Virus record (IMG/VR): IMGVR_UViG_3300029908_000004
Location: 151,292-215,291 of that record
Direction: 5' to 3' (one strand)
DNA length: 64,000 nt
Below are positions 5,608 to 59,014 of this stretch, one piece after another. Made by a program: the position numbers and the translations under genes. The notes under the pieces are model-generated. The model made no database searches and was not told where the DNA came from. It worked only from the letters and a program-made list of their open reading frames with translations. The stretch's first letter is position 1, and each line of letters starts with the position of its first letter.

Positions 5608-5622
5608 TAATTTTGGATCGTA

Positions 5623-15748: not shown

Positions 15749-15777
15749 TTGTTGTTCTTAGTCTTTTAAGCTATACT
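15749..15777 (+). promoter_or_regulatory. sigma70-like promoter
   Basis: TTGTTG-N17-TATACT in a 50-bp gap, followed by RBS GAGGTG before ATG 15794. Confidence 0.5.
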
Positions 15778-15793
15778 AAATAGAGGTGTAATA

Positions 15794-29431: not shown

Positions 29432-30908
29432 TAGCAGCGATTCAACTCAAACACTATTAATGAATAGATTGAATAGGATAGCCCCAATTCTTAGGGCGTT
29501 AGATTATTCGACTAAGGAGGACTATCAAGCAGCAGTTTACAGCTTGGTAAATAATGTCATAGCCCTGGGCAATAATATGCAACCTATAAAAGCTATGACA
29601 GCCGGTCCAGCTATAGTGGGGGATACTTCTACTAATCTCATTCAATTGAATCAAGACGCACAAGATATATTAAGTGAAATACTAGTGGTAGAGAGTGCAG
29701 CAGCTAGGGTATGTAATTTAGCTGCGGCGAGCCAGAATCAATTACGGCAGTTCATTAGAGAAAAGATATATCAGAGTACAACAGTCAAGTATGTAGAAGA
29801 CTTTGTTAATGCTGATAATACAAACACAACGGCTACAACAGCCAATGTAGATTTCTCTGCTGGAGTTGCTACCTTACCAGTTCTGAATACCACTACAATA
29901 TCTCCAACTATAACAATAGGTTCAAATTCTGTTGGAGTATTAGATTCGTCCTCATCATTAACTAATTTGACAGATGGTAAAGTACAAACATCTATGGTTT
30001 GGAATGGCACAGAATTGGAATTGTTATTAAACTTTCCAAGCTCACAGGTAATAAATAGACTTATATTGACGCTGGATGAATACAATGGAATGAACATAAC
30101 CACGTTAGCTACATCTCCAGACGGTACTTTATATGAGGACGTTCTACTAGATATCAATCAAGACTCTATTCTATTAGACGGAATAACGGGAAAGTATTTA
30201 GGAGAGCTAATATTAGATTTCCCACCAAGACACGCCTCTACATTGCGTATGGTAATAGAGGATACCTCTGGGATGGGGGTTATTGGGTTAAGAAACCTAT
30301 CGATATACCAATTACAATATGGTCCTTCTGCAACATTTGTGGGTAATCGCATGCTTGGACCTGTAGGAACTGTAGAATTTACTACGAATCAACTGACGTG
30401 GTCCCCGATGGTTTCTGTGAGTCATCAAATAAGTTACAATAGTTCTACTTATATCCCAGTTATTCCGGGGGATATTATAACGATTCCAACAGGATACCTA
30501 TGGTATAGAGCTATACTAAATAGGAATACACAAGCATTTAATATGTCTGCTCAGACTGTTAATAGCAATGTTCTAGATCCAGCAAGTTCCGCTAATTATA
30601 CCTTAAGTAACACTACGTATATCCCGTTAGGTAACGGAACTAGTCAGAGAGTATTGACGTTTAGTTCTATTGTCGGACCAGTGCCACTCAGAGAGATACC
30701 ACTACCGAGCACATTACAAGTCAAAATGGGAAATGTGTATCTAACTACCGTACAGTATAATTTTGCAAATCAAATTCTATCTTTTTCTGGACCACAGACT
30801 AATATAGTAGTTAGCTATGTTACAAGTGCTCTTGGAGCCGCTTCTATCTCTGATCTTCAGAGCTATTATACACCTTTGCTATACGAAGCAAGGTTTGAAA
30901 AGGTTTAA
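29424..30908 (+). CDS. Putative virion structural protein (discoidin-like domain possible)
   Basis: NLTDG...W...INRL...TSPDG..Y pattern reminiscent of F5/8-type beta-sandwiches. Confidence 0.6.
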   Translation: MFNSSDSTQTLLMNRLNRIAPILRALDYSTKEDYQAAVYSLVNNVIALGNNMQPIKAMTAGPAIVGDTSTNLIQLNQDAQDILSEILVVESAAARVCNLAAASQNQLRQFIREKIYQSTTVKYVEDFVNADNTNTTATTANVDFSAGVATLPVLNTTTISPTITIGSNSVGVLDSSSSLTNLTDGKVQTSMVWNGTELELLLNFPSSQVINRLILTLDEYNGMNITTLATSPDGTLYEDVLLDINQDSILLDGITGKYLGELILDFPPRHASTLRMVIEDTSGMGVIGLRNLSIYQLQYGPSATFVGNRMLGPVGTVEFTTNQLTWSPMVSVSHQISYNSSTYIPVIPGDIITIPTGYLWYRAILNRNTQAFNMSAQTVNSNVLDPASSANYTLSNTTYIPLGNGTSQRVLTFSSIVGPVPLREIPLPSTLQVKMGNVYLTTVQYNFANQILSFSGPQTNIVVSYVTSALGAASISDLQSYYTPLLYEARFEKV

Positions 30909-30910: not shown

Positions 30911-32584
30911 ATGTCAACCCCATCTATAACCCCGATAAGTTTACCAACGTTTGTATTAGGAGAACAAGCAAGTGCTTCTACTTATCTAGAAGCTCTGCAA
31001 TCGCTGGTAAACCAAGGTACGTTAACACTTAGTGAGTTAGGTAATACTAATACAACCACTTTGATAGATTTAAATCGTAGGATGTCGGCTATAGATGCTC
31101 ATAGACAGCGGGCAAATAGGTTGGATACCTATGGTATTTATGCTAACTTCAGTGTTGGTGACATGTTTTCTGTGGATCAAACACAATCTAGTGCCACAGT
31201 TCGTATAGATTCACAAAGCTCCACACTTAAGCAGAGACCAAACTTCGTAACTGCATCCGTAGCCTCAACAGTATTTTCATCTAATATAGGAACGGTACAA
31301 ACCTTAGATGACACTAATACTTTATGGACTGTAACTACAAGTGGGGCTATACCAACTGGATCTTTTAGCATAACATTAGATAATCCAGTTAATCTTAATG
31401 TAATTGTTGTAGATATATCAGCAATATCTTCTACACCGGTTATGACTGCTAGTGCTTCCTCAGATGGAGTAAATTATACACAGGCTACATCAATAGATTT
31501 AAGTGGTTATACTGTTAGTGCTTGGTTTCCCTCAATGGACGTAAAGTATTTCACCCTCCAGATAACACCAGTAATGGCAGATACCCCAAATGGGTATAGT
31601 TTTACGTTTGGACTGACTAACTTCAATGCTACTGGTATAGAATATTCTTTACAGTCCTTCTTGATGATGAATTCATTGACTTTTATTCCAGAATCATCTC
31701 AAGCAATGCTTATAACAGATACTACCCCTAGAATTTCTTATTATTTGTCATTAACGCCAGAGGGGTCGGCACAAGCACCATTTGTAGAAGTTACTCCGAA
31801 TACCCCTATTCCATTACCGGGGACAAGCGTTATTTCTATACAGAATGTTTCAGATGTATCATTAGAGTACTCTACATTTTTAAATGGGTTATCATTAACA
31901 CCCGGACAGTTTGTCGTCCCAACTATACCTAACGGATTCGCTTATCAAGCTCCTTATGGTGGTGTATTACAAGCTACTGGAGAGCCTAGATGGCCAACTA
32001 CACCCGGTCTTATGATAGTTTCTGGTACAGCAGAATTAACATCATACCCGAATGGGACCTTTATGTCGCGTACTTTATATCCATTAGGAATGATTGTTAG
32101 ACCCTCTGTTGATAATGGATTCGTTTACCAAGTCACATCAGCGGGTACAACAGGTAGCGAGGAACCAAGCTGGCCTACCACTATTGGGGCTACGGTTTCC
32201 TCTTTCGGGGAAGGGCGCCCAGCTATATTCACTTGTGAATACGCTGGCATACTGTGTACAGAACTACCATTAAATACTTATTTAAATACTGTTCACGTAG
32301 TATCTGATGCTACTGGAGAAACTATAGATTTAGCTCCAGGATTAGTTCCTTCTTATGGGGCGCAGCAGAACCTATTAGGAACTTATATTGGCTTAGTCGA
32401 GGGTTCCAGCGGGTGGCAACCTTATATAATTTCTAGTAATCCATTCGCGAACTTCGGTTCCTCTTATACAATAACTTATACTTGTGGCCCAGCAACGATA
32501 ACTGCTGCTCTACAGGTCAAATTTGACACGGAAGACATAGCTTCCAGCCCAGTGTTCTATGGGGCGACTCTCCAAGAGTATTAA
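30911..32584 (+). CDS. Putative structural protein with two short carbohydrate-binding-like repeats
   Basis: Repeated NGF.YQ....G.....EP.WPTT.G modules (about 31930-32010 and 32110-32195). Confidence 0.6.
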   Translation: MSTPSITPISLPTFVLGEQASASTYLEALQSLVNQGTLTLSELGNTNTTTLIDLNRRMSAIDAHRQRANRLDTYGIYANFSVGDMFSVDQTQSSATVRIDSQSSTLKQRPNFVTASVASTVFSSNIGTVQTLDDTNTLWTVTTSGAIPTGSFSITLDNPVNLNVIVVDISAISSTPVMTASASSDGVNYTQATSIDLSGYTVSAWFPSMDVKYFTLQITPVMADTPNGYSFTFGLTNFNATGIEYSLQSFLMMNSLTFIPESSQAMLITDTTPRISYYLSLTPEGSAQAPFVEVTPNTPIPLPGTSVISIQNVSDVSLEYSTFLNGLSLTPGQFVVPTIPNGFAYQAPYGGVLQATGEPRWPTTPGLMIVSGTAELTSYPNGTFMSRTLYPLGMIVRPSVDNGFVYQVTSAGTTGSEEPSWPTTIGATVSSFGEGRPAIFTCEYAGILCTELPLNTYLNTVHVVSDATGETIDLAPGLVPSYGAQQNLLGTYIGLVEGSSGWQPYIISSNPFANFGSSYTITYTCGPATITAALQVKFDTEDIASSPVFYGATLQEY

Positions 32585-32588
32585 ATCT

Positions 32589-32597
32589 TGGTATACT
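32589..32597 (+). promoter_or_regulatory. Extended -10 promoter
   Basis: TGgTATACT in the gap before ATG 32613, with AGGA RBS. Confidence 0.45.
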
Positions 32598-32612
32598 ATT
32601 TAGGAATAGATA

Positions 32613-33776
32613 ATGTCTACATCACCACTAAATCTTGAAACAATTGAGCTTGTGTCCACTCTAAGAACGGCTCCCTTAAATGGGTCTCCCTCTTCACAAG
32701 ATTATAATGATTGTGAAAGAGAGCAATTAACCGATCTGGCGGCGGTAGTATCGTTCTTAAATGATACCGTCCGTGTTTTACTCAATTCTCTACCTAATAC
32801 CGCGATGTTGCCAATTTCGGATCCAGTTGGGGTAGAAGGTAGAACTATCTATTGCGATACTAGTGATACAAGTTCACTATTCTTTTCCAATGGTTCCCCA
32901 CTAAGTATAGCAGACTCATTAAGAGTATTAAATGGTATGTTACAAACGTTTAAGACTACCCTTAGTAATCAAACGGTTCAGTTAGCAGCGCTACAATCTA
33001 GATTGGCTACCACCAACCAGAATGATGTTTCAGCGGTATTAAATAACTTTTCTGGGCAGATAACCTCTATATTAAATACCATACAGAATTTGGAAGCAGA
33101 GATTAATGCCATAGAAGTAGTAGCAGGATTAGGGGCCGGAGGATCAAACGTATTACCAAGAGCCTTAACAGAAGTGCCGTATTCTGCCACCCCAACCTTT
33201 GATTGTTCTCCTTCTAGTGGATTACTCACCTTCCAAATGGCACTAAGTGGTGATGTAACAGCGCCAGTAGTAATTAATCAATCAAGCGCGCAAGTAGTTA
33301 CATTTTTAATAACACAACAAGGTGTAGGAGGACACGCTTTTACTTGGCCCAGTAATGTACATAACGCAGCCGCGATAAGTACAACGCCTGGTTCTACTAC
33401 ATCACAGAGTTTTACTGTAGATGCCACTGGTAATATGTATCCAATATCGCCAAATACACCAGCACCTATTGTACCTACTACAGGTGCTACTACGGTCCCG
33501 TTAAATTCTAATCGTAATATTACTTCTGCAACGAACAGTGTTTTCCTTTGTACTTCTGGTTCAGGTGGGATAACCTTAACACTACCTAGCGCAGTTCCAT
33601 ACGCTTCGTATGTATACTACATTAAAAAGGTTGATACTGGTGTTGGATCAGTAAATATTATTACAACTAGCAGTCAAACGATTGATTCTAATATAGGATA
33701 CAATTTGGTTAACAAAGGTCAGTTTGTACAAGTCGTGAGTGACGGTAGCAACTGGCAAGTAATCGGAGCTAATTAA
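32613..33776 (+). CDS. Tail fibre-like protein
   Basis: Coiled-coil region, then ITQQGVGGHAFTWPSNV fibre module and C-terminal TLTLP...YIKKVD...SQTID...QVVSDGSNWQVIG domain. Confidence 0.75.
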   Translation: MSTSPLNLETIELVSTLRTAPLNGSPSSQDYNDCEREQLTDLAAVVSFLNDTVRVLLNSLPNTAMLPISDPVGVEGRTIYCDTSDTSSLFFSNGSPLSIADSLRVLNGMLQTFKTTLSNQTVQLAALQSRLATTNQNDVSAVLNNFSGQITSILNTIQNLEAEINAIEVVAGLGAGGSNVLPRALTEVPYSATPTFDCSPSSGLLTFQMALSGDVTAPVVINQSSAQVVTFLITQQGVGGHAFTWPSNVHNAAAISTTPGSTTSQSFTVDATGNMYPISPNTPAPIVPTTGATTVPLNSNRNITSATNSVFLCTSGSGGITLTLPSAVPYASYVYYIKKVDTGVGSVNIITTSSQTIDSNIGYNLVNKGQFVQVVSDGSNWQVIGAN

Positions 33777-36700
33777 TGAAAAATCTACTACGCATCGCGA
33801 TATTTACTATATTTGCTAGCCTTACTCTATTAGGTCAGCAAGGTGGTGTGTCTACCCCTATTCGTTATGGCAGCAGTCTACCCACAGGAGCTGCTCAGGG
33901 ATCGTTGTTTAATGTTTCTGGGACTGGGTTATATAAGTGTAATGCTAGTCCTTGTACTACTTCGGCAAACTGGACAAAGTTAGCTGAACTCGATGCAACC
34001 GGTAATTTTAATTCATCGAATATTTCAGGATGGCAACCTTCCGGGCTACTTGCAATGGGCGACTCAACAGCCAAGGGAGCTTACGGCGGGAACAATATCG
34101 ACGATGGAAACGGATTCAATTACTTTCTTGGTTTGCAGACACCCGGCGTAACGAACATCGTTGCTTGGGACGGTTCTATGATGCCCGATGTGGCTCAGTT
34201 ACAACTGTACCCACTAGGTCCATTCGCCTATGGAGCAGCACCACGAATGACCTTGCAAGACGGTTTAAATGATGGTGCTAACTATGGTTCATCAGTGAAC
34301 CAAAAAGCTATCTTTGTAAAATCACATCTTGCCGTTCTATCGCGTGCTTTAATCCCGTTGAGTAATACAGTCCAAGCCACAAATGGAGCGATTGTACAGA
34401 GTGGGACTTGGGTACTGAATACATCTCGCATTGGCACACTAGCTCCGACGCTTGAGTCGAACGCGAACGGGTCCACGCTCACTGTTCCGATCACGACAAC
34501 TGGCGGACCAATATATGTTCAGTATGAACAATTGGATGGAAATAGTGGTCAGGCGACTCTCGCCATAGATGGTATAACAGTTGATACATTAAACAGTGGT
34601 AACCCCGGAACCGCTGGAAATTGTATATGCACACACAACAATGTCTTCGCCCCACCTATTGGAACGAGTGGAGGACCACAATCAGCACCATTGGCAGGGC
34701 GATACCCAGTGTCCGCTGGTTTTCATATTCTTACCTTCACAGTTACTGGAGCGACCGGCTCTGGCATGGGATTCAGTTTTATCGCTGCAGCAACACCCGG
34801 AACAGGTATCGCAGCATCTACCCCAGTTGCAGGCGGGCCACCTAGCCTTTGGGAAGGCGGAGTAACGAGAACAGAGACATATCCATCAGACCCCACCAAT
34901 GTTTATGACGGAATGATTCAGACTGACCTTTCCTTAGTACAGAACGATGGATTGAATGCCTATTATGTATGCGGCCTTGCGGGAGATTACGCGAGCTTCC
35001 CGGCAAGTCCGATCCAGCCGCTTGGGTGTAGCGACGTAGCCAGTTTCTATCTCGACAACGCGTATGTCCCGATCAGCACTACGGCCTACGATGGCGTATC
35101 GGTTCTGACGGTGGTTTCGACGTTGCCGATCCCCGCTGGGGTGTATGTCGGTGACTATCACACGATCTGGGGAACCACGACGCACACAGAACTTTCAAAC
35201 ACCCACTTCTGGAGCGTTAATAGTATCTCTGGTAACACTATAACATTTAGCCAGCCGGGGTTTAACTCAGTCGCGTGGACTACCACAGCAGATGTAGGGT
35301 CTACGTCGAAGCAACACCACGACGACTTCCATCCAAATGGGAACGACCCAACAACGGGCATTACAGGCGGTTACTGGCAGATGTCCTTGGCTTATAACCA
35401 TATGATGAAGTTGCCAGGAGGCAGTGGGTCCGCGAACTCGTCTTCATCTACAACCAGCTCATTAAACTTGAGTCAAGTCACGCCAAGCGCTACGTTTACT
35501 CTGACTCCGACTTCTGGGGTTGTGCTGTCAAACGGCCAACCTCTTATATTTCCGGCGATGACTGGAAATGTTGGACCATTCTGGGTCTTTAATAACGGTT
35601 TAGTAAGTAGTGCGGTTTCCTTTACAGGTGGGGCAGTAGCCAATCCACATCTTTCAGCGTTATTTCCAATCGCACCGGGTACTGGAGTTTCTTTTGTAGT
35701 CAATTCGGGTATTTACTACAACCCAATTGGTGCTTTCAGTGGAACTAGTGGTTCTTCTGCACCGACTTCTCTTGCTCTGAACCAAGTCTCTGATGCAGGC
35801 ACTGTCACTCTATCGTCCACTTCTGGTGCAGTCCTAACGAATGGGAACGCTGTCGTGCTTCCTGCGTTGACTGGCAATCTCGGCCCATTCTGGATTTACA
35901 ACAACAGCTCAACAGGTAGCTCGATCACTGCATCAGGAGGGGCTATACTTGATGCCCACATACCCTCCACACTCTCAGCCCACTCTGGTATCTCGTTGAT
36001 TGTAAACGGAGGCATTTATTGGAATCCAGTTGGGCAATTTAGTCCAATAGCTTCGCCAACCCTTGCAGATTACACAATAAGCAACCCGTGGAGTGCTAAT
36101 CAAACTTTCCAGAGCATCTACGCTGGGCCTGCCGGCGTGGCTACCAGCGGAGCAAATATAAACAGTTACTACCTGGGCCTGTGCGGATCGGGCTGGAATG
36201 GGTCGGCGGCGGCAAATTTCTGTGGCTACCTCCAAGGCGCAATGGGCACCGGAACGAATCCGGCATTTACCTATAACTTCATGTCCGTGCCGGGTGCTGC
36301 GGCATCTTACATGAACATGTCCAGCTTAACGTCGAAGGGGTTGACACTTCCGCCCAGTACCTTTACGACAAACGGAAGCGCCAACGCTGCGCAAAACACA
36401 CTAGGCCTGAATAACGGCGCTGGAATCACAGTGGCTAACAATCCCAGTTATCCATACGGTACTAGCTTTGCTTGTAACACAGCGACAAGTAGTGCAGTAG
36501 GATGTTCGATGCTTGGTGCATCGGGTGGCTCGGAAGGGTACTTAGGTCTTCCGGCTGCGAATAATTATTATCTTTCGTCTACTACTGCCGGTGTGAGATC
36601 ATGGGTCGCGCCTGCGGTTTATACACTTCCAACACAATATACTATAGAACCATGCTCAGTAGGATTATGGAATGGTGGGGCTGCGATTACAGCCGGCACA

Positions 36701-36979
36701 TATAATTTACCAGCGCGATGTCTTAATGTCTACGGGGTAACGTACACAGCTACAGCCGTTAAATGCTACTCGGATAACAACGGTTCTTCGACTGGAAACG
36801 TAGCGGACAATAGCGCTAATGCCTTATTGACTGGGGCAGTCACAGCAACAAATTCATGGGCAAGTGGTACGGTGAGCGGAACTCATTACACCATTGCATC
36901 GAACGCTTGGACAAACTGGACCTTTGTGGCAGATGGAATTAGTACGGTACTCCGTTGCACAATGACAACAACGAGATAG
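33776..36979 (+). CDS. Signal-peptide-bearing SGNH/GDSL esterase-domain protein (tailspike- or adhesin-like)
   Basis: N-terminus MKNLLRIAIFTIFASLTLLG. SGNH blocks GDS (34058), GLND (34262), DDFHPN (35321). Many Cys residues, tandem ~95-aa repeat, higher GC than flanks. Confidence 0.75.
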   Translation: MKNLLRIAIFTIFASLTLLGQQGGVSTPIRYGSSLPTGAAQGSLFNVSGTGLYKCNASPCTTSANWTKLAELDATGNFNSSNISGWQPSGLLAMGDSTAKGAYGGNNIDDGNGFNYFLGLQTPGVTNIVAWDGSMMPDVAQLQLYPLGPFAYGAAPRMTLQDGLNDGANYGSSVNQKAIFVKSHLAVLSRALIPLSNTVQATNGAIVQSGTWVLNTSRIGTLAPTLESNANGSTLTVPITTTGGPIYVQYEQLDGNSGQATLAIDGITVDTLNSGNPGTAGNCICTHNNVFAPPIGTSGGPQSAPLAGRYPVSAGFHILTFTVTGATGSGMGFSFIAAATPGTGIAASTPVAGGPPSLWEGGVTRTETYPSDPTNVYDGMIQTDLSLVQNDGLNAYYVCGLAGDYASFPASPIQPLGCSDVASFYLDNAYVPISTTAYDGVSVLTVVSTLPIPAGVYVGDYHTIWGTTTHTELSNTHFWSVNSISGNTITFSQPGFNSVAWTTTADVGSTSKQHHDDFHPNGNDPTTGITGGYWQMSLAYNHMMKLPGGSGSANSSSSTTSSLNLSQVTPSATFTLTPTSGVVLSNGQPLIFPAMTGNVGPFWVFNNGLVSSAVSFTGGAVANPHLSALFPIAPGTGVSFVVNSGIYYNPIGAFSGTSGSSAPTSLALNQVSDAGTVTLSSTSGAVLTNGNAVVLPALTGNLGPFWIYNNSSTGSSITASGGAILDAHIPSTLSAHSGISLIVNGGIYWNPVGQFSPIASPTLADYTISNPWSANQTFQSIYAGPAGVATSGANINSYYLGLCGSGWNGSAAANFCGYLQGAMGTGTNPAFTYNFMSVPGAAASYMNMSSLTSKGLTLPPSTFTTNGSANAAQNTLGLNNGAGITVANNPSYPYGTSFACNTATSSAVGCSMLGASGGSEGYLGLPAANNYYLSSTTAGVRSWVAPAVYTLPTQYTIEPCSVGLWNGGAAITAGTYNLPARCLNVYGVTYTATAVKCYSDNNGSSTGNVADNSANALLTGAVTATNSWASGTVSGTHYTIASNAWTNWTFVADGISTVLRCTMTTTR
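35455..36042 (+). repeat. Tandem ~95-aa domain duplication inside the SGNH protein
   Basis: SLNLSQV..TLTPTSGVVLSNG..PAMTGNVGPFWVFNN..GIYYNPIGAFS versus SLALNQV..TLSSTSGAVLTNG..PALTGNLGPFWIYNN..GIYWNPVGQFS. Confidence 0.9.
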
Positions 36980-36986
36980 GAGATTT

Positions 36987-37958
36987 ATGAAACAACTACT
37001 CTTAATTTGTATAATACTATGTGCTGGAGCTCTTCATGCGGCGACTTGGTATGCGGATAGTGGGACAGCCAATGCTAGCGCAATTACGTGGCACGCCACT
37101 TCCGGAGGAAACTGCGTCACTGGGAGTGGAGCAACGCTGGCTTGGGGCAGTGGTACGAGCACGGATGTCTTCGACTCCAACGGCTGTTCTGCTATCGCCA
37201 TCACCACCGAACCGGGGTCAGGCTGGAGCGGAGCCAGCGCTGGAGTATGTGGCACTGGGGGCACTACTCCAACCATTCAGACGAACACGACGAATGGTGG
37301 TGGATTCACTTATGCAACTGCAACCAATATCATTACACATATGAACGTCACAGCCACTAAATCACCAGCGCTAGTTGTGTCAGGAACCAGTGGTGGTGGA
37401 ACTATATGCGGTTATATCACTGGAGGCAGTGTAGCTTCCGCTTATGGTGTATCTACCACTCATGGAACGGTGGCTCTATATATTATTGGTGGTATAACAG
37501 GTGGGACAACATCGTCAACTTATGGGTATTACAGTGTGTCTGGAAATGGTCTTACAACCATAATTGGCAACGTGACCGCAGGTAGCGGAAGTGGATCATC
37601 CTATGGTATGAATCTTGTGGGGACCGGGGCAACTACTATTATTGGCAACTGCATAGGTTCAAATACAACTGCAGCTACAGGATGTAATACTGGTACTTCC
37701 ACTATTACACTCACAGGCTCATTGATTAATGGATTAAAAGGACTGGGTGCACTGACTCCAGTTCTATTTACCCCTTCAGCTACTAGTTACATTCTCTATC
37801 CGAAGGATGCTAGTTATACGCTTGGGGTTGTAAATAGCCATGCTACGGTGGTGCCAGCTGATCCGGGTGCTGCTAACGTTCGAAGTGGAACCGTTTATGG
37901 ACCGTTCACTGGTACAATGAGTAGTACTGGTGCTGTTAGTTCCGAGAGTAGTTGGTAA
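36987..37958 (+). CDS. Signal-peptide-bearing Gly/Thr-rich protein (beta-helix-like)
   Basis: MKQLLLICIILCAGALHA signal with probable A|A cleavage. Repeating IIG.ITGG....YG units, six Cys in the mature part, AGGAG RBS. Confidence 0.75.
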   Translation: MKQLLLICIILCAGALHAATWYADSGTANASAITWHATSGGNCVTGSGATLAWGSGTSTDVFDSNGCSAIAITTEPGSGWSGASAGVCGTGGTTPTIQTNTTNGGGFTYATATNIITHMNVTATKSPALVVSGTSGGGTICGYITGGSVASAYGVSTTHGTVALYIIGGITGGTTSSTYGYYSVSGNGLTTIIGNVTAGSGSGSSYGMNLVGTGATTIIGNCIGSNTTAATGCNTGTSTITLTGSLINGLKGLGALTPVLFTPSATSYILYPKDASYTLGVVNSHATVVPADPGAANVRSGTVYGPFTGTMSSTGAVSSESSW

Positions 37959-37986
37959 TTAATGTATAAATTATATAAAGAGGGCT

Positions 37987-38403
37987 ATGGGAAGAATTAG
38001 AAAGCCGAAGATAAGACGTCCTCCACGCAAATCTATACCATATAGCGCGATACGTAAAGCTAATCGGCGAAGACCTAGAAGTAGTTTAGAAATCACAGTA
38101 GGTGGGTGGTTAAAAGAGGAAGAAATCCCATTTGTGCGAGAGAAAGCAATAGGAAGATGCCACGTAGATGTTTTCCTACCTCCACGCACTATAGTAGAAT
38201 TAAATGGTTGTTATTGGCACGGCTGTATGATTTGTAATAAGGAGCCAACCCAAAATCAGAAAATAGCACAGATAAAAGATGGTCGACGATACGCCTATTT
38301 CAGGAATCGTGGCTATGATCTAATAGTTATTTGGGAATGTGAAGTAAAGAAAGAGCCTAATAGAGTAAGAGCTATGCTAAAAACTCTAGCTAATCAAGGA
38401 TAA
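37987..38403 (+). CDS. Vsr/DUF559-like endonuclease
   Basis: SSLE, HVDVFLP, IVELNGCYWHG, KD..R, GYDLIVIWECE. Confidence 0.88.
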   Translation: MGRIRKPKIRRPPRKSIPYSAIRKANRRRPRSSLEITVGGWLKEEEIPFVREKAIGRCHVDVFLPPRTIVELNGCYWHGCMICNKEPTQNQKIAQIKDGRRYAYFRNRGYDLIVIWECEVKKEPNRVRAMLKTLANQG

Positions 38404-40086: not shown

Positions 40087-41238
40087 CTAAACAGAGGGCT
40101 TTTTTCTAAGGCGTACTGCGTGTCCTTTAAGATATAGCATGACTTCAGAATATCTTTTCTTAGCCGTTTGGCTATCACAGCCAAGAACGGCACCAACATC
40201 CTTCCAACTATATTCAAGAACCCACACCATTCGAAGGATATTCCTTTCCATAGGTGTTAGGTTCCTGAATAACTTGTCATTAGTTTCCTGAACCCAACCT
40301 AAAGACATTTCACTTATGTCTAATGGTTGTCTTATTAAGACTGTATCCGCTGACCAAGATTGCCCATCGGAATCAGTGAAGTCACCGTCTGCGTTAGGCA
40401 TCCCGAACTCTTTAGAAGAGAAGACATCATTGTCAGGGGCTCTTCCACTTCTATAATCGAGTTGCAACATGCCTGCTTGGGACTCGATGGATGACATTTC
40501 TGCTGAGATGTATTCATGTAAGTAGTATCTGAAGTACATCTGGATGAAATAGGTGAGACCAACCGGCCCAGACTCGAAAAAGGACTTGGGGGGTGGCCAT
40601 GAAAGCCTTTTATATCCTGTGATTTTCTTCTTCGGCCCAGCAACACTGGAGAGAAAACCTTTGCGCACCAGCAAGCGAATACAGCCAGTACTATCAAAAC
40701 CGAGTCTGGAGGTAATTTCCGCTGCTGTAAATTCGATTGTTGATTTGCCCCTACGTTTTGGAAACGATTCGTTGATTGTTTCGTGTACCCTTCGTACCTT
40801 GTCTGTATACGTTGGGTCATACTTATCCACAGCTCTCATTAAACATAGGACAAGTATATCATATATATCATCACAAGTCATCTGTTTAAATGCTAGGTGT
40901 AGTGTTTTACATACGTTCTGAAGGACGGGCCTAGAGATGGTTTGTTTATCCATCGTCTTTGGTACTAAAGTTTTGAGGAAGACTACAGTATCCCTACCAG
41001 CAGCAGACTTTATAGGAGGCATATTACCACGAACGATCATATGTAAATATTTCATCAGATAACCATGAAAATACTCCATCAATCGTAATAGGATAGCTTC
41101 CCTATCCGCTTCTGGGGGTAGAGAAGCATAGGTAACCCCTAGAAGATTAACTTCTTCACGGTTATTGAAATCCTCCTCAACTGGAACCCTCCATTTAGAG
41201 GCATAGTGAGAAGAACTTAAGTTTGAATTTCTATACAA
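40087..41238 (-). CDS. sigma70-family-like transcription factor with insertions in region 2
   Basis: Region 2.2-like DDIYDILVLCLMRAVDKYDP, 2.3-like LTYFIQMYFRYYL, region 4 HTH LTPMERNILRM...SWKDVGAVLGCDSQTAKKRY. Start reassigned to TTG 41238, which has AGGAG 7 nt upstream. Confidence 0.75.
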   Translation of the reverse strand: MYRNSNLSSSHYASKWRVPVEEDFNNREEVNLLGVTYASLPPEADREAILLRLMEYFHGYLMKYLHMIVRGNMPPIKSAAGRDTVVFLKTLVPKTMDKQTISRPVLQNVCKTLHLAFKQMTCDDIYDILVLCLMRAVDKYDPTYTDKVRRVHETINESFPKRRGKSTIEFTAAEITSRLGFDSTGCIRLLVRKGFLSSVAGPKKKITGYKRLSWPPPKSFFESGPVGLTYFIQMYFRYYLHEYISAEMSSIESQAGMLQLDYRSGRAPDNDVFSSKEFGMPNADGDFTDSDGQSWSADTVLIRQPLDISEMSLGWVQETNDKLFRNLTPMERNILRMVWVLEYSWKDVGAVLGCDSQTAKKRYSEVMLYLKGHAVRLRKKPSV

Positions 41239-41288
41239 TGACTTGCTCCTAGTCCCCACCAGAAGCAATTGTACCCAGTAACATCTTT

Positions 41289-41318
41289 ATTATACACTAA
41301 TACAACTCATTGAGTCAA
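41289..41318 (-). promoter_or_regulatory. Near-consensus sigma70 promoter with overlapping palindrome
   Basis: Minus strand TTGACT-N18-TATAAT. ACTCA-T-TGAGT palindrome at 41305-41315. Confidence 0.7.
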
Positions 41319-44984: not shown

Positions 44985-45746
44985 TCAAATGATTCCGAAG
45001 AATTGGTTTTTTTCACGTAGTACCTCCAAACAAGGTTTAGTTGAGCAATGTTCACAATGTGAGCCCGGGATAGCATAAAAAGGTTTAACCTTTATTACAT
45101 TAACTATAGATCTTAACATGTTTGTTGCCAAACGTTCTTCTACATACTTGTTAATCCAAGGTGTCCCATGTATCAAAGGAAGATGATAAATACCCACTTC
45201 CTTATATTCATGATAAGTATTCTTAACGTGGATATACCTAGCTAAAGAACTTGCTTGAGGTAGTGTGCTCTCCGGTTTTGAATGATGGTTACGCTCAACT
45301 GCTTCGTACACCAATATCATAACAATGCTATTCTTACCACGTTTACGAACAAGACTGTATCTTCCCTGAATAGTATACCCTTCTAAAGGCAACTCATAAG
45401 GTTGTTCTGGCATTAAGATATAGCACAGCTTAAGAAAATCATATATTTTCTTAGATGTTTTAATAGCCTGTCTAGGACCTTTCCAATAAGGCCCGCTTAA
45501 TGGTATATCATCTTTACTTACTATCTGATGAGTTTTAAACCATAGAGCGTCCCAAAATAACATATACTTATCACGTATCTCCTTTAGGGAAAGGTTATAA
45601 CAATCAAAGGTCTTACGTATGGCCCAGCGTAACGTATCACACGCACACTCATAAGCCCACATATTATTATCAATACCGGGTACCATCATAGGACATAACA
45701 GTACCCGGTCTAATTCAATTTCATTAACTACAGGATTCAGACTCAT
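44985..45746 (-). CDS. Cas4/AddB-like PD-(D/E)XK-fold protein, probably catalytically inactive
   Basis: N-terminal LLCP and C-terminal PGSHCEHCSTKPC Cys ligands. EQPY..IQGRYSLV..ILVYE replaces the usual GRIDL..DYK. Confidence 0.6.
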   Translation of the reverse strand: MSLNPVVNEIELDRVLLCPMMVPGIDNNMWAYECACDTLRWAIRKTFDCYNLSLKEIRDKYMLFWDALWFKTHQIVSKDDIPLSGPYWKGPRQAIKTSKKIYDFLKLCYILMPEQPYELPLEGYTIQGRYSLVRKRGKNSIVMILVYEAVERNHHSKPESTLPQASSLARYIHVKNTYHEYKEVGIYHLPLIHGTPWINKYVEERLATNMLRSIVNVIKVKPFYAIPGSHCEHCSTKPCLEVLREKNQFFGII

Positions 45747-55981: not shown

Positions 55982-56215
55982 TTACAAGAAGTTTGGGTCA
56001 ATTGGGTCGAATTTGTCATAGTTATTATCATCATCTGAGTCTTTTCGTCCGTCAGGCTTTGTAGGTTTAGCTACTCGTGGCTTAGCGATTGGAGTTGAGC
56101 AATATTTCAGACCATTCTCATGAACCCAAATTCCCCACATACCTTTCTCTTTAGAAATAAGACTCTTACAAAAGTCGCATAAGCCATAATTTTTGTTTTT
56201 AACTACTGATGCCAT
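55982..56215 (-). CDS. Small Zn-finger-like protein
   Basis: CDFC...WVH.....C. GTG start in the track, or ATG at 56209. Confidence 0.6.
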   Translation of the reverse strand: MASVVKNKNYGLCDFCKSLISKEKGMWGIWVHENGLKYCSTPIAKPRVAKPTKPDGRKDSDDDNNYDKFDPIDPNFL

Positions 56216-56241
56216 AGTTTATCCCTTCACGTCCTCGTGCT

Positions 56242-56655
56242 TCACTTCGTCCCTCCATTGGCTTTCCCGGCAAGCGCCGCCCGCGCAATCTCGTTTCCCC
56301 TGCTATTTCCGAAGTCCGGTTCGTTGCCAAGACGCGCCAGCTTATCTAATGCCGCCTCCAACTCTACGACGCGGGCCTTGAGCGCGGTATTCTCCTCCCT
56401 CACTCCTGCGAGTGCCGTTGCATTGCGAACCTTCTCTAAATCTCGCCACTGTTCCCATGCCGCCACGCGGGCCTTGAGCGTGGTGTTCTCGGCCTCCAGC
56501 GGGGCGGCGATATGGGCAGCGTAGGCGGCGTGGTCATGATAGAGTACGAAAGAACCTTCGGGATGCTCGTAAGCTTGTATTTCATCGCCGCCTTTGAATA
56601 CCAGAACACGGTATCGTTTGATCGGCTCCGCTGGCGTTACCTTCGGGGCAGTCAT
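56242..56655 (-). CDS. Coiled-coil hypothetical protein
   Basis: HPEGSFVLYHDH motif. ENTTLKARV/ENTALKARV duplication (DNA 56465-56490 and 56369-56394). Confidence 0.7.
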   Translation of the reverse strand: MTAPKVTPAEPIKRYRVLVFKGGDEIQAYEHPEGSFVLYHDHAAYAAHIAAPLEAENTTLKARVAAWEQWRDLEKVRNATALAGVREENTALKARVVELEAALDKLARLGNEPDFGNSRGNEIARAALAGKANGGTK

Positions 56656-57677
56656 CTTGTTTCCTCTTTTCCAATATGCATACCCAGCGCAATCCGTGAT
56701 CCTCTATGTCGTTCGTTGGCATATGTCCTCGGTTGAATCTGGAAGTCAATCGGAAGTCCTGTAATCTTTGACAGCCGTTCCGAAATAGCAACAGTCAGCA
56801 GCAGCCACTTCGCATCCTGTTCCCAGCATCTACCAGCGCCGGGAAACTCTGTGGCAAACTGTTCGTCCGACATGATGAACCGCACATCTACATCACGCCA
56901 GTCAGGACGATCAAGGGATGATCCGACAAGGTAGCACCCCCAACCGCCGAATGCCTCGGTGAGCTGGCGGCACGCCGTTTCGAGTGCAAAGATGGCCGGA
57001 GCACCAACGTAGTTACATTTCTTGCGCGGTGCTACTTCGGGGTCAGTCGTCTCCGGTGCGGGACTGCCATGTGCAGCACACGGCAACTTTCCGTGGCAGC
57101 AATCGCAAGTCATTGGCGGCGTTACCTTCGGGTCAGGCTGCACGATCGGCTCCGGCGCGGGCTGGTTGGCCTCTGCCGGATCATGTTCGACAATACGTTT
57201 CAGGATGTTAGATGCATCGAGGTGCGCGTAAGCGTGCTTTGGGCTGGCCTCCGACTTCTTTATTCCACGCGCTGGGTCAGGCATGTTCTCTTCTGCGAAC
57301 CGCTTGTCGTGCTCCGGATTATTTCCTCCGAAGATGTCTTCGTAAGGCGCGTCCGGTATCTTCGTCGCAATCTCATATTCCGCAAGGCATTCCGGTGAGT
57401 GACTGCGCCCATCCGTGCAGCCACAATTCTTTCCTTTGCAGGGCGGTAGTGTTTGATGTATGGCCTCCGCTGTTATAAACCGATCACCCTTGCTGCGTAC
57501 AGGTTCGGCGGAATCCCATACAAACCCGAGTTCCAGTGCAACGGACTGCCACGCTCTGTTAGCGTTCTCCTGCGGACTAGATGGCTCCCCGCACTGGACA
57601 GCGATGTACGGAACAGGTTTACTCGCGCCAAGGATGCGATCCAATTGCTGCTGTGATAGCTCAAATTCCTGTCTCAT
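56652..57677 (-). CDS. Mosaic protein with C-terminal Pol-beta-like nucleotidyltransferase motif
   Basis: CYLVGSSLDRPDWRDVDVRFIM (GS...DxD), later PIDFQIQ. Start at ATG 57677 (ATGA overlap, GAGG RBS). Confidence 0.65.
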   Translation of the reverse strand: MRQEFELSQQQLDRILGASKPVPYIAVQCGEPSSPQENANRAWQSVALELGFVWDSAEPVRSKGDRFITAEAIHQTLPPCKGKNCGCTDGRSHSPECLAEYEIATKIPDAPYEDIFGGNNPEHDKRFAEENMPDPARGIKKSEASPKHAYAHLDASNILKRIVEHDPAEANQPAPEPIVQPDPKVTPPMTCDCCHGKLPCAAHGSPAPETTDPEVAPRKKCNYVGAPAIFALETACRQLTEAFGGWGCYLVGSSLDRPDWRDVDVRFIMSDEQFATEFPGAGRCWEQDAKWLLLTVAISERLSKITGLPIDFQIQPRTYANERHRGSRIALGMHIGKEETR

Positions 57678-57982
57678 GAATTCCTCTTTCCTGCCGCGTC
57701 CGGTAGCTTCGGCAGAAACTTTGAGCACAACATCCCGCTAGGATGATGCACCGGAAGCCCCGGCCCAAGAATCGAACTGAATGGAGGCGTGATCGTTTTC
57801 TCCCCACGGTCGCACGCTTCACACGATACGTCGGGCGCGTCCGGTATCTTCGGGATACTGCCGCCAAGCTTGCTGGTGGTAACCGATGGTTCAGGTACGC
57901 ACCCACATAGAAAATTCCCGTTGATCGCGGCTTGCCCGCACATCGGACAATGAGAAAAGCTCGTGTAATGTTCGACGTTCAT
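57674..57982 (-). CDS. Cys-rich small protein
   Basis: CPMCG..CGC and CEAC..H....C. Confidence 0.6.
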   Translation of the reverse strand: MNVEHYTSFSHCPMCGQAAINGNFLCGCVPEPSVTTSKLGGSIPKIPDAPDVSCEACDRGEKTITPPFSSILGPGLPVHHPSGMLCSKFLPKLPDAAGKRNS

Positions 57983-58149
57983 AATTTCCCTTCCCTTATC
58001 CGTTGGATCAAACTCGGCTTAGGCTCTGGAGGTTTCTCGTTCTCGTTAATCCAGAATCCACAACGGGCGCACATCAGCTTGCAATCTCCCCCATACTTCA
58101 GGATTCGCTTCTTTGGTGGGCATGAACACCAAATTGGATCGTAACTCAT
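57979..58149 (-). CDS. 56-aa Zn-finger-like protein (absent from the ORF track)
   Basis: MSYDPIWCSCPPKKRILKYGGDCKLMCARCGFWINE...GKL*, with ATGA overlaps at both ends. Confidence 0.7.
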   Translation of the reverse strand: MSYDPIWCSCPPKKRILKYGGDCKLMCARCGFWINENEKPPEPKPSLIQRIREGKL

Positions 58150-58553
58150 CCCTTCTTCCCTTCTGCCGCGTCAAGGGCGGCGAGGATTGCGTCAGCGGCT
58201 TCCTTTTTCAAGCTCCTACTACCTTGGAAAAAATACTGCAACTTATTAAGCAATATCTCCTGCCTCTTATTGACTGGCACAAGGGAATCATTGCGGCAGG
58301 CAACAAAATCACGAAGAATCGTGGTGGCCAAGCCTCCATACTGCTTACCTGTTGTGGCTTCTATCGTTTCGACAGCGTCGCCTATTTCCTCCGGTGTTGG
58401 TGGCTCCAGTAGCTTGCCGGGTAGGTGGTCGGCTGCGGTTTTAATAACGATACGCCAGCCTGACCACTCAGGACTGTATGAGTATCCCGCTTCGTTCAGT
58501 GCTTTGATACTCGCTTGTTTAGCTGCTTGAAATACCTCTTCTGGTAGATTCAT
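58146..58553 (-). CDS. Hypothetical protein
   Basis: 135 aa, ATGA coupling, GGGGAG RBS. Confidence 0.7.
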   Translation of the reverse strand: MNLPEEVFQAAKQASIKALNEAGYSYSPEWSGWRIVIKTAADHLPGKLLEPPTPEEIGDAVETIEATTGKQYGGLATTILRDFVACRNDSLVPVNKRQEILLNKLQYFFQGSRSLKKEAADAILAALDAAEGKKG

Positions 58554-59014
58554 TTAGTCTTCTTCTCCCCTTCGTGGGCAGCGGGCAAGCGCTGTAGTCT
58601 ATCAATCTCTGCTGCGATGAGTGCACCCGCTTTCACGAGATTGCGGATAGGGTCAGGCGACGGCTTCCACCACTCATCACTCCATTTTGGGGGCCAGAAA
58701 ATCTCGTTTAATGGAGCGCGCTCTGGGTGCAGACAACCGTTCGCGCACAAATAACACTTGGCAACAGCGGTCAATTCGCAATCACTGTGTTCATCGTCAT
58801 GTTCTGGCGTCCAACCCTCCACTGTGATCTGCCGTTGCCGCTCCGCCGCGATTAGAGCCGCTCCGTTTGGAGTTGATAATGTTTGCCCAACTCTACTAGG
58901 GTGAGGAGCTTGACATTCACAATAATTATTTTGACAGCCTAATGCCCATACACTTTCATCGTGTGCTGAATGATCACCATTCTTACAACTATCACAGATT
59001 GTTGGGTTACTCAT
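58550..59014 (-). CDS. Chimeric hypothetical phage protein
   Basis: AT-rich Cys/His N-terminus fused to a GC-rich IAAERQRQITVEGWTPEHDDEH...NLVKAGALIAAEIDR domain common in phages. Confidence 0.75.
   Translation of the reverse strand: MSNPTICDSCKNGDHSAHDESVWALGCQNNYCECQAPHPSRVGQTLSTPNGAALIAAERQRQITVEGWTPEHDDEHSDCELTAVAKCYLCANGCLHPERAPLNEIFWPPKWSDEWWKPSPDPIRNLVKAGALIAAEIDRLQRLPAAHEGEKKTK

What the first reader, a model, noticed from the sequence alone, without database searches (positions are those of the whole stretch)
40087..41238. Phage sigma-like factor with a winged-helix-like domain inserted inside region 2
Seen: region 2.2-like LMRAVDKYDP (~40815) and 2.3-like LTYFIQMYFRYYL (~40520-40560) are ~85 aa apart, whereas they are nearly adjacent in sigma70. 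The insert FTAAEITSRLGFDSTGCIRLLVRKGFLSSV..KKITGY looks like a wHTH. A further ~45-aa insert lies between the 2.1- and 2.2-like segments. Inference: an extra DNA-binding module next to the -10 melting surface could define a new promoter-recognition mode, perhaps for late genes.
Basis: partly seen in the sequence, partly recalled or inferred. Interest (0 to 1): 0.66.

Follow-up and report, generated by a model that had tools for sequence, protein, structure and literature searches.

The report
Phage sigma factor with inserted winged helix
An uncultured 215-kb peat phage encodes a sigma factor (the protein that directs the host's RNA polymerase to promoters) with a basic winged-helix domain inserted exactly where sigma factors read the key promoter base. 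The phage and seven related phage records (at least four further lineages) also share a promoter-like motif with no -35 box, so this looks like a new variant of promoter recognition.

Summary
Window 40087-41238 (-) encodes a 383-aa protein. A confident AlphaFold2 model (pLDDT 84.5) shows a sigma-2 domain, a linker and a sigma-4 domain, with no sigma-3. Residues 143-217 lie between the region 2.2 helix (LMRAVDKYDP) and the aromatic region 2.3/2.4 helix (LTYFIQMYFRYYL) and fold as a textbook winged helix. All top-50 Foldseek hits of the isolated insert are winged helices, though E is 0.085 or weaker. The insert sits at the entry to the "specificity loop" that reads the flipped -10 "master" base. 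It is strongly basic (mean +9.6) and is present in every full-length relative (173 clusters at E<=1e-30). A complex test places region 2.2 on the beta' clamp coiled-coil (0.63 against 0.01 for the best control). The phage has no other sigma and no detectable RNA polymerase. This phage and seven related records share TATACTAnnnAG, which is enriched, largely intergenic, co-oriented with downstream genes and lacks a -35 box. I infer a late or middle sigma that directs host polymerase to these promoters, with the winged helix adding DNA contacts. DNA binding and the sigma-motif link are inferred, not shown. Verdict: a new variant of a known kind.

The parts
40087..41238 (-). Gene for the 383-aa sigma70-family factor (TTG start; the stop codon is included in the range).
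   Evidence: ORF. Start and RBS. 92 homologues. AF2 model pLDDT 84.5.
41289..41318 (-). The gene's own sigma70-type promoter: -35 TTGACT (41318-41313), an 18-nt spacer, -10 TATAAT (41294-41289).
   Evidence: Sequence; consensus scan (G000 192609). This is a consensus match only and has not been shown to be active.
41233..41274 (-). Leader hairpin with a GGGG loop. Its 3' arm holds the Shine-Dalgarno AGGAG (41250-41246) and its outer stem covers the TTG start.
   Evidence: RNAfold gives -18.7 kcal/mol. Equivalent hairpins with changed stems occur in five other lineages.
40933..41238 (-). N-terminal region, aa 1-102: helices 27-39, 44-56, 58-70 and 79-89. This is family-specific extra material upstream of region 2.1. 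In the complex model aa 45-54 also touch beta'.
40888..40932 (-). Region 2.1-like helix, aa 103-117 (LQNVCKTLHLAFK; H114, L115 and A116 are invariant).
   Evidence: Pfam Sigma70_r2 positions 9-45 map to aa 106-144. hhalign. Conservation.
40813..40875 (-). Region 2.2, aa 122-142 (DDIYDILVLCLMRAVDKYDP). This is the predicted contact surface for the beta' clamp coiled-coil.
   Evidence: SigF alignment. PHROG 351 and TIGR02980 hits. Complex-test interface aa 119-138.
40588..40812 (-). Winged-helix insert, aa 143-217: H1 144-158, a basic loop, beta1 170, H2 172-179, H3 184-192, beta2 196-200, wing KKK 203-205, beta3 206-211, then the invariant W214-P215.
   Evidence: mean net charge +9.6.
40480..40587 (-). 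Putative specificity loop (FFESGPVG, aa 220-227) and the aromatic region 2.3/2.4 helix, aa 228-253 (LTYFIQMYFRYYLHEYI).
   Evidence: hhalign against FSTYA..WIR. Conservation. Role of the specificity loop from PMC6411747.
40336..40479 (-). Low-confidence linker, aa 254-301, holding a conserved acidic beta-hairpin (ADGDFTDSDGQSWSAD; G285, G292 and D298 are invariant). It may be the equivalent of the sigma-finger (region 3.2). No sigma-3 domain is present.
   Evidence: The sigma-finger role is an inference.
40105..40335 (-). Sigma-4 domain, aa 302-378 (regions 4.1/4.2 helix-turn-helix).
   Evidence: Pfam r4_2 and r4 hits, below cut-off. PDB profile hits to SigF and FliA at E 2e-4. hhalign E 1.1e-5. 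VIA Z 7-8.
15772..15783 (+). Candidate phage promoter TATACTAAATAG, 22 nt upstream of the ORF at 15794.
32592..32603 (+). Candidate phage promoter TATACTATTTAG, 21 nt upstream of the ORF at 32613.
30512..30523 (+). Motif match TATACTAAATAG inside coding sequence, 399 nt upstream of the ORF at 30911. Two more intragenic matches lie at 3328-3339 (+) and 45366-45377 (-).

Best explanation
The gene encodes a genuine sigma70-family factor of an uncultured ~215-kb peat phage that has no detectable RNA polymerase of its own. Its layout resembles an ECF sigma: sigma-2, a linker and sigma-4, with no sigma-3. It carries a basic 75-residue winged-helix (wH) domain spliced between region 2.2 and the specificity loop plus region 2.3. 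The gene lies at the end of the replication (early/middle) module. It has a sigma70-type promoter and a leader hairpin that covers its ribosome-binding site. Once made, the protein would dock region 2.2 on the host beta' clamp coiled-coil. It would then direct host core polymerase to the clade-specific promoters TATACTAnnnAG, which lack a -35 box and sit in front of structural genes. The TATACT core would be melted and read by the aromatic 2.3 helix and the specificity loop. The wH domain sits at the base of that loop. I propose that it supplies the extra DNA contacts, on the flank of the core or on the upstream duplex, that sigma-3 or a -35/sigma-4 contact supplies in other sigmas. Shown by computation: the architecture, its conservation, the predicted beta' interface, and the existence, enrichment and orientation of the motif. 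Inferred: that this sigma reads the motif, that the wH binds DNA, and the timing.
For: Sigma identity. Sub-threshold but consistent hits: Sigma70_r4_2 and r4, PHROG 351/1740/3512 sigma factor, TIGR02937 over aa 119-370 and Sigma70_r2. Profile hits to SigF and FliA in the PDB. hhalign sigma-4 E 1.1e-5. Structural hits to sigma28, WhiG, SigB, sigmaS, sigma32, ECF sigmas and pro-sigmaK.

Insert. The wH topology appears in a high-confidence model. Net charge is +9.6, with conserved R188, R/K192-193, K203-205, K/R210 and R211. The insert is present in all full-length relatives.

Insertion site. With the insert removed, hhalign joins KYDP to GPVGFvYf..FRYYL as regions 2.2 and 2.3. The loop between them is the specificity loop that reads the flipped master nucleotide (PMC6411747).

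Core binding. The complex test scored 0.63 against a best control of 0.01. That mark was reached by 51 of 78 solved complexes and 2 of 108 mismatched pairs. The runs agree in at least 76% of contacts and the partner's pLDDT is at least 70. The interface is the 2.2 helix against beta' 267-298, and the wH lies outside it.

Genome context. No other sigma and no RNAP genes were found in the genome.

Motif. TATACTAnnnAG occurs 20 times against 4.6 expected in this phage, 9 against 0.35 in a 59%-GC relative and 13 against 0.55 in a 51%-GC relative. It was found in all five further related records. Sites are enriched in intergenic DNA (p 4e-7 and 5e-5) and co-oriented with downstream genes. All 9 sites in the structural block are on the coding strand. 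There is no conserved -35. In relatives representing three further lineages (five loci) a motif lies just downstream of the sigma stop codon.
Against: No family model reaches its curated cut-off. All Foldseek E-values are 0.014 or weaker, and VIA Z values of 7-8 are in the range the tool calls middling. The link between this sigma and the motif rests only on co-occurrence and on the lack of another candidate. TATACT is itself a near-consensus sigma70 -10 hexamer, so host sigma could read it. The position of the wH relative to DNA could not be examined because no coordinates, PAE or protein-DNA modelling were available. Many wH domains bind proteins rather than DNA. The metatranscriptome contigs gave no information on transcription start sites. 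The beta' test used E. coli beta', because the host is unknown, and a pass may reflect the model's memory of solved sigma-beta' complexes.
Confidence: 0.6

Rival explanations
1. The protein is a true sigma, but the winged helix is a protein-binding or structural module rather than a DNA reader. It could pre-organise the specificity loop as sigma region 1.2 does in primary sigmas. It could also dock an anti-sigma factor, a phage co-activator or another part of RNAP.
For: Li et al. (PMC6411747) report that region 1.2 packs on and orders the specificity loop in sigmaA, and that the loop is disordered in ECF sigmaH, which lacks 1.2. The pLDDT of the wH is higher in the full-length model (91-94) than in isolation (75.7), which suggests it packs against sigma-2. 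Many wH domains mediate protein contacts (general knowledge).
Against: The strong conserved positive charge on the recognition helix and the wing tip is typical of nucleic-acid binding. The promoter-like motif is about 12 nt long and lacks a -35 box, so extra DNA contacts are needed from somewhere.
Confidence: 0.25
2. TATACTAnnnAG is read by the host primary sigma, possibly helped by another phage factor, and the phage sigma recognises a different promoter class that I did not detect.
For: TATACT matches TATAAT at 5 of 6 positions, including A-11 and T-7. One site (G000 41473) has a perfect TTGACA 18 nt upstream. No experiment links the sigma to the motif.
Against: The motif, including positions outside the hexamer (A7, A11, G12), is conserved in phages with 41-59% GC and therefore probably different hosts. 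Canonical -35/-10 pairs are not enriched in the genome (43 against about 45 in shuffles). No second enriched upstream motif emerged. The sigma is the only conserved candidate specificity factor found.
Confidence: 0.2
3. The protein is not an initiation factor. It would be a sigma-like decoy that occupies the beta' coiled-coil to shut off host transcription.
For: Only the beta' contact has computational support. The family-model scores are sub-threshold.
Against: The protein keeps an aromatic 2.3 helix (Y230, F231, Y/W235, F236, R237, Y238, Y239), a specificity-loop-like segment, a conserved linker hairpin and a sigma-4 helix-turn-helix. These are all parts that only an initiating sigma needs. 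The phage has no RNAP of its own and no other sigma to express its late genes.
Confidence: 0.06
4. The 'insert' is a displaced sigma-3 domain (a permuted order of sigma regions), not a foreign winged helix.
For: With the insert kept, hhalign aligns H1 plus the helix-turn-helix to FliA regions 3.0/3.1 (E 2.5e-4, probability 43%).
Against: The insert alone against the sigma alignment gives only 24 columns at probability 7%, which is generic helix-turn-helix similarity. Sigma-3 has no beta-hairpin wing. Every structural neighbour of the insert is a wH and none is a sigma-3 domain.
Confidence: 0.04

Closest known systems
ECF (group 4) sigma factors, e.g. E. coli sigmaE and M. tuberculosis sigmaH
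   Same: Both have a two-domain sigma-2/linker/sigma-4 layout without sigma-3. Region 2.2 is used to bind the beta' coiled-coil. A specificity loop between 2.2 and 2.3 reads a flipped -10 nucleotide (PMC6411747).
   Different: In this protein a 75-aa winged helix is spliced in at the entry to that loop. There is also a ~100-aa N-terminal extension. TIGR02937 scores 26 bits against a cut-off of 42.9. The candidate promoters have no -35 box, whereas ECF promoters depend heavily on one.
Phage T4 late transcription (gp55 sigma with gp33 and the gp45 clamp; promoter TATAAATA)
   Same: A phage-encoded, highly divergent sigma redirects host RNAP to late genes through a single extended -10-like element with no -35 box (general knowledge; Iyer et al., PMC7824862).
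   Different: gp55 is a minimal sigma-2-only protein that needs separate co-activators. This protein keeps sigma-4 and carries an extra domain within the same polypeptide. No sequence relationship to gp55 was tested or found.
Sigma70 non-conserved region (NCR) and sigma region 3.0 (extended -10 recognition)
   Same: These are precedents for lineage-specific insertions in sigma-2 (the NCR, between regions 1.2 and 2.1) and for an extra duplex-DNA reader just upstream of the -10 element that can make the -35 box dispensable (general knowledge).
   Different: The NCR sits at a different site and is not a DNA-binding fold. Region 3.0 is a helix of a separate downstream domain. I know of no described sigma with a folded DNA-binding-type domain between 2.2 and 2.3, and four full-text searches found none.
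Winged-helix DNA-binding domains (CAP/CRP C-terminal domain, IscR/Rrf2, LexA, Zalpha, MarR/IclR)
   Same: The H1-beta1-H2-T-H3-beta2-wing-beta3 topology is shared: rmsd 1.8-3 A over 59-74 residues, with a basic recognition helix and wing.
   Different: There is no significant sequence match to any wH family in Pfam. No stand-alone relative was found. Here the domain is nested inside another domain's loop instead of being a terminal module.

Membership tests
Sigma70 family | A sigma-2 domain (regions 2.1-2.4) recognised by the family model | tested here: inconclusive
   Pfam Sigma70_r2 scores 12.9 bits against a cut-off of 24 and covers only positions 9-45, up to the insert. TIGR02937 scores 26.3 against 42.9. 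With the insert removed, hhalign restores regions 2.2 plus 2.3 at E 0.0025-0.006. Structure matches to the sigma-2 of sigma28, WhiG and pro-sigmaK give Z 7.5-8.2.
Sigma70 family | A sigma-4 helix-turn-helix domain (regions 4.1/4.2) | tested here: met
   hhalign against E. coli sigmas gives E 1.1e-5 and probability 82%. PDB profile hits to SigF and FliA give E 2e-4 to 9e-4. VIA gives SigD4 Z 8.0 at 2.9 A over 66 aa. The Pfam r4 models fall just below cut-off, but they are over threshold in many homologues.
Sigma70 family | Region 2.2 binds the beta' clamp coiled-coil of core RNAP | tested here: met
   Tested by prediction only. The complex test scored 0.63 against a best control of 0.01, a mark reached by 51 of 78 solved and 2 of 108 mismatched pairs. 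Contacts are aa 119-138 with beta' 267-298. No biochemical test was done.
Sigma70 family | Confers promoter-specific initiation on core RNAP | not testable with these tools
   The evidence is indirect: it is the only sigma in a genome without RNAP genes, and the clade shares a promoter-like motif.
ECF (group 4) sigma | Only sigma-2 and sigma-4, joined by a linker, with no sigma-3 or region 1.1 | tested here: met
   In the AF2 model aa 254-301 are a low-confidence linker with one small hairpin, and no three-helix sigma-3 domain is present.
ECF (group 4) sigma | A compact ~170-200 aa protein that reaches the ECF family model threshold | tested here: not met
   The protein is 383 aa. TIGR02937 is below cut-off. 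PF07638 Sigma70_ECF gave no hit. I do not file it as an ECF sigma.
Winged-helix fold | A three-helix bundle with a helix-turn-helix, followed by a beta-hairpin wing (H1-b1-H2-H3-b2-W-b3) | tested here: met
   DSSP of both models shows it. All top-50 Foldseek hits of the insert model are wH domains. About 25 wH chains score Z 6.7-7.8. This is a predicted structure only, and Foldseek E is 0.085 or weaker.
Winged-helix fold | Binds nucleic acid through the recognition helix and wing | not testable with these tools
   The only supporting evidence is the conserved basic residues on H3 and the wing, and a net charge of +9.6.
T4 gp55-type late sigma | A minimal sigma-2-only protein that acts with gp33 and the sliding clamp | tested here: not met
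   A sigma-4 domain is present. A gp33 or gp45 partner was not searched for.

The most novel reading that the evidence does not exclude
The winged helix nested in the specificity loop is a third promoter-reading module of a sigma factor. It would contact DNA immediately flanking the melted TATACT core. A single polypeptide could then recognise a ~12-nt promoter with no -35 box and open it on host RNAP. That would be a promoter-recognition geometry not seen in any solved holoenzyme, carried by a large family of phage sigmas (at least 173 sequence clusters).
Probability: 0.35. Interest if true: 0.8.

Novelty: new variant of a known kind. Interest (0 to 1): 0.64.

Why it matters
Sigma factors are textbook modular proteins. 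Their known variation is the loss of domains (ECF sigmas, T4 gp55) or insertions in the non-conserved region. A folded, basic DNA-binding-type domain inserted at the specificity loop has not, to my knowledge, been described. That loop is the element that captures the flipped "master" nucleotide and sets -10 specificity.

If the insert contacts DNA, it would show a new way for a sigma to do without the -35/sigma-4 contact. It would also give synthetic biology a compact orthogonal sigma/promoter pair (TATACTAnnnAG).

The finding also gives a first regulatory map for a widespread, uncultured clade of ~215-kb phages. The map is a sigma gene at the end of the replication module, a leader hairpin over its ribosome-binding site, and a shared late-promoter candidate. 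The phage was found in more than 20 peat metagenome runs.

Tried and rejected
1. tblastn of the protein and megablast of 10 kb against 50,697 phage records found nothing. The primase-helicase has only hits of 25% identity or less. There is therefore no cultured relative to lean on.

2. Foldseek of the whole model and of the insert gave no hit at E<=0.001. I used only the unanimity of the hit classes plus VIA-align.

3. The idea that the insert is a displaced sigma-3 was rejected as generic helix-turn-helix similarity (probability 7%).

4. A word search with the insert profile for stand-alone relatives gave three hits. The two I aligned are fragments of the same sigma family, and the third was not checked. 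The donor of the wH remains unknown.

5. I looked for a -35 element upstream of the motif and found none in three genomes.

6. Canonical TTGACA-N16-18-TATAAT pairs are not enriched (43 against about 45 in shuffles).

7. Transcription-start evidence from reads: one peat metatranscriptome (X23) has four short contigs on window 32001-38000. The contig at 32478-32820 runs across the motif at 32592, so it shows neither a start nor proof of transcription.

8. The idea that the wH senses DNA methylation (DpnI-like wH, Z 6.8): the genome has no Dam or N6/N4 methyltransferase Pfam hit, so I did not pursue it.

9. The ESM Atlas feature and fold searches returned only generic viral and bacterial sigma clusters.

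10. I did not attempt to correlate motif variants with sigma residues, because there are too few lineages.
Full report
**Setting.** The window is the last 64 kb of a 215,291-bp IMG/VR virus record judged complete, with about 41% GC.

- A naive gene map shows one 80-kb block on the + strand. It spans G000 111412-191139, which corresponds to window positions up to 39848, and it contains baseplate-wedge and other structural genes.
- Almost everything else is on the - strand. This includes a primase-helicase, a UvsX-like recombinase, a RusA-like resolvase, an AAA ATPase and a SNF2 helicase.
- The target gene is the last gene of a - strand block and converges on the end of the structural block.
- The phage occurs in more than 20 peat metagenome runs.
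- It has no cultured relative: the sigma has no hit in 50,697 phage records, and the primase-helicase hits are at most 25% identical.

**Checking the observation.** The ORF at 40087-41268 (-) is real.

- The best start is TTG at 41238, 7 nt downstream of AGGAG. The N-termini of the homologues align to it.
- LMRAVDKYDP is aa 133-142 and LTYFIQMYFRYYL is aa 228-240, so they are 85 residues apart.
- In E. coli FliA, RpoS, RpoH and RpoD the corresponding motifs (..AVxKFD.. and FSTYA.WWIR) are separated by 5-8 residues.

**Is it a sigma factor?** No curated model reaches its cut-off, but every line of evidence points the same way.

- Family hits: Sigma70_r4_2 and r4 at aa 323-368; PHROG sigma families 351, 1740 and 3512; TIGR02937 spanning aa 119-370 as one stretch; Sigma70_r2 positions 9-45 on aa 106-144, ending exactly where the insert begins.
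- A profile of 47 homologues hits SigF and FliA in the PDB. The region 2.2 alignment with SigF runs up to "DLSYDVKFS". hhalign gives sigma-4 at E 1.1e-5.
- The AlphaFold2 model built with that alignment is confident (mean pLDDT 84.5, with 232 residues at 90 or above).
- Foldseek's top hits are almost all sigma chains of holoenzyme structures, although E is 0.014 or weaker because the domain orientations differ.
- Exhaustive VIA-align gives sigma28/FlgM Z 8.2, WhiG Z 8.1, pro-sigmaK Z 7.5 (103 residues at 3.2 A, spanning model residues 9-251, so it bridges the insert), SigB, sigmaS, sigma32, ECF sigmas and many sigma-4 domains.
- The nearest ESM Atlas clusters are sigma families.
- A complex test of aa 20-258 with E. 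coli beta' 250-320 scored 0.63 against a best control of 0.01. That mark was reached by 51 of 78 solved complexes and 2 of 108 mismatched pairs. The runs agree in at least 76% of contacts and the partner's pLDDT is at least 70. The confident contacts are aa 119-138 (the 2.2 helix) and aa 45-54 against beta' 267-298, the clamp coiled-coil. This is the canonical sigma anchor. It may partly reflect the model's memory of solved holoenzymes, and it shows likeness rather than measured binding.

**The insert.** In the model, aa 144-158 (H1), 170 (beta1), 172-179 (H2), 184-192 (H3), 196-200 (beta2) and 206-211 (beta3) form the classical winged-helix order.

- VIA-align matches aa 141-225 to the CAP C-terminal domain (Z 7.8, 72 aa, 2.8 A), IscR, Zalpha, CooA, IclR, MarR, Fur and the DpnI wH.
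- Folded alone (pLDDT 75.7), the insert gives 50 top Foldseek hits that are all winged helices: LexA, KAT6A WH, Zalpha, histone H1, IscR, MntR, AraR and ScpB. E-values are 0.085 or weaker.
- The fold class is therefore well supported on predicted structures, but homology to a particular wH family is not. Pfam finds nothing. A profile word search for stand-alone relatives returned three hits. The two I aligned are fragments of this same family, and the third was not checked.
- The insert is strongly basic, with a mean net charge of +9.6 over aa 142-216 in 47 sequences. Conserved basic residues sit where wH domains touch DNA: R188 and R/K192-193 on H3, K203-K205 at the wing tip, and K/R210 and R211 on beta3. 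W214 and P215, at the return to sigma-2, are invariant.

**Where exactly it is inserted.**

- With the insert computationally removed, hhalign joins "...LMRAVDKYDP" to "GPVGFvYf..FRYYL" against "...AVERYD...FTTYA..RIR" of the E. coli sigmas (E 0.0025-0.006). That places R237 opposite the conserved Arg of region 2.3 and Y/W235 opposite W434.
- The segment between 2.2 and 2.3 is the "specificity loop". In both primary and ECF sigmas it forms the pocket for the flipped master nucleotide: A-11 for sigma70 and T-9 for sigmaH (Li et al. 2019, PMC6411747).
- Here the conserved FFxSGPVG (aa 220-227) is left as a loop immediately before the aromatic helix, and the wH hangs from its N-terminal end.
- After the 2.3/2.4 helix comes a low-confidence linker with a conserved acidic hairpin (aa 284-298), then sigma-4. 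There is no sigma-3 domain.

There is indeed extra sequence (aa ~71-102). However, Pfam and hhalign place region 2.1 at aa 98-117, directly before 2.2. The extra material then lies upstream of 2.1, at the position of the sigma70 non-conserved region. This is not fully settled, because helix 44-56 also touches beta' in the complex model.

**Conservation.**

- The word search found 92 homologues at 36-76% identity, 360-400 aa long, on contigs up to 226 kb.
- The exhaustive profile search found 817 clusters at E<=1e-3, 495 at E<=1e-10 and 173 at E<=1e-30. All full-length members are colinear over profile positions 1-370. I saw no member without the insert.
- The gene order primase-helicase, orf185, orf178..., sigma is kept in the IMG/VR relatives.

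**What it probably does.**

- The genome has no other sigma-like ORF and no Pfam-detectable beta, beta' or T7-type RNAP. Late transcription must therefore use host core polymerase. Very divergent phiKZ-like polymerases cannot be excluded entirely.
- The most enriched 7-mer in upstream regions of this phage is TATACTA (13 upstream regions against about 2 expected).
- Aligning the sites gives cTATACTAwaTAg, with no conserved -35.
- I fetched two complete relatives with sigmas 46% and 39% identical and GC of 59% and 51%. The same core emerged on its own. In the 51%-GC phage the top upstream 7-mers spell TATACTAATCAG. In the 59%-GC phage all ten TATACTA occurrences read tccTATACTAGAyAG.
- Counts of TATACTAnnnAG are 20, 9 and 13, against 4.6, 0.35 and 0.55 in Markov shuffles.
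- The five further related records all carry it, with lineage-specific middles: ATC, ACA or ACC.
- Sites are enriched in intergenic DNA (11 of 20, p 4e-7; 7 of 13, p 5e-5) and co-oriented with the genes downstream (17 of 20 and 11 of 13).
- In the structural block of this phage all nine sites are on the coding strand. Two in the window lie 21-22 nt upstream of ORFs (15772 and 32592).
- In relatives representing three further lineages (five loci), a site follows the sigma stop codon by 39-490 nt on the same strand. There the sigma gene ends one transcription unit and the motif opens the next.
- The sigma gene of this phage has a sigma70-type promoter instead: TTGACT, 18 nt, TATAAT.
- I therefore infer a cascade. 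Host sigma expresses the phage sigma together with the replication genes, and the phage sigma then drives TATACTAnnnAG promoters.
- A 12-nt single-block promoter without a -35 box resembles T4 late promoters. It needs more contacts near the -10 region than a bare sigma-2 gives. The basic wH at the specificity loop is the obvious candidate to provide them, but this last step is inference.

**Rivals.**

- The wH could order the specificity loop or bind a partner protein (confidence 0.25).
- The motif could be read by host sigma, since TATACT is near-consensus (0.2). Its conservation beyond the hexamer across phages of very different GC argues against this.
- A decoy role (0.06) and a displaced sigma-3 (0.04; hhalign probability 7%) are unlikely.

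**What is known.** Four full-text searches found no description of a domain inserted between regions 2.2 and 2.3, or of a wH inside a sigma. The comparative survey of jumbo phages describes only "minimal" and "RpoD-like" phage sigmas (PMC7824862). I therefore rate this a new variant of a known kind: a sigma70-family member with an unprecedented nested domain and a matching candidate promoter class.

**Limits.**

- All structures are predictions.
- I could not read coordinates or PAE, and no protein-DNA modelling was available.
- The host is unknown, so E. coli beta' served as a proxy.
- Gene calls in the relatives are naive ORF calls.
- The one metatranscriptome gave only contigs, and one of them runs across a motif site, so it says nothing about start sites.

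Noticed in passing
window 41233-41274 (-); also L011-L017 around locus positions 9940-10010: The sigma mRNA leader folds into a hairpin with a GGGG(A) loop. Its 3' arm contains the Shine-Dalgarno sequence, and in this phage the outer stem GTACAAT/ATTGTAT also covers the TTG start. Equivalent hairpins with different, compensating stem sequences occur in six lineages (-15 to -23 kcal/mol), preceded by a conserved GGTACA. This suggests translational control of sigma synthesis.
   Followed up: partly
L011 11296, L012/L014 11104, L015 9917, L016 11586 (locus coordinates): In several relatives a TATACTAnnnAG site lies 39-490 nt downstream of the sigma stop codon on the same strand. There the sigma gene sits directly at the boundary with a motif-driven unit. 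In the window phage the gene instead converges on the structural block.
   Followed up: partly
G000 3598, 41473, 44534, 66982, 104076 (outside the window): Several motif sites of the form CTATACTAtATAATAG lie in front of small + strand ORFs embedded in - strand early regions. They could drive small late genes or antisense transcripts across early genes.
   Followed up: no
window 34000-38000 and 56000-60000: Two stretches have markedly higher GC (0.47-0.54 against about 0.40). The first covers a 1067-aa ORF (33776-36979) and a 323-aa ORF with no family hits, and it is followed by a Vsr/HNH-like endonuclease ORF (37987-38403; PHROG 13076 and 3339). The second covers ORFs 56242-57728, which have no Pfam hits. 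These may be recently acquired or mosaic segments.
   Followed up: partly
window 1-15743: Three very large + strand ORFs are present: over 1172 aa (open at the window's start), 1641 aa and 1731 aa. They sit beside an ORF that matches the C-terminal part of PHROG 4871, 'ATP-dependent protease' (4089-5153, E 1.7e-85). I did not examine them further.
   Followed up: no
whole genome G000, upstream-region k-mers: tRNA T-arm-like words (GGTTCGA, AGTTCGA) are enriched in intergenic regions outside the window, so the phage probably carries a tRNA cluster. No tRNA gene lies in the window itself.
   Followed up: no
window 41259 (-): The identical database protein (P0002) is 390 aa long, which implies that gene callers chose GTG at 41259. 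That start lies inside the 5' arm of the leader hairpin and lacks an RBS. The homologue alignment favours TTG at 41238.
   Followed up: yes
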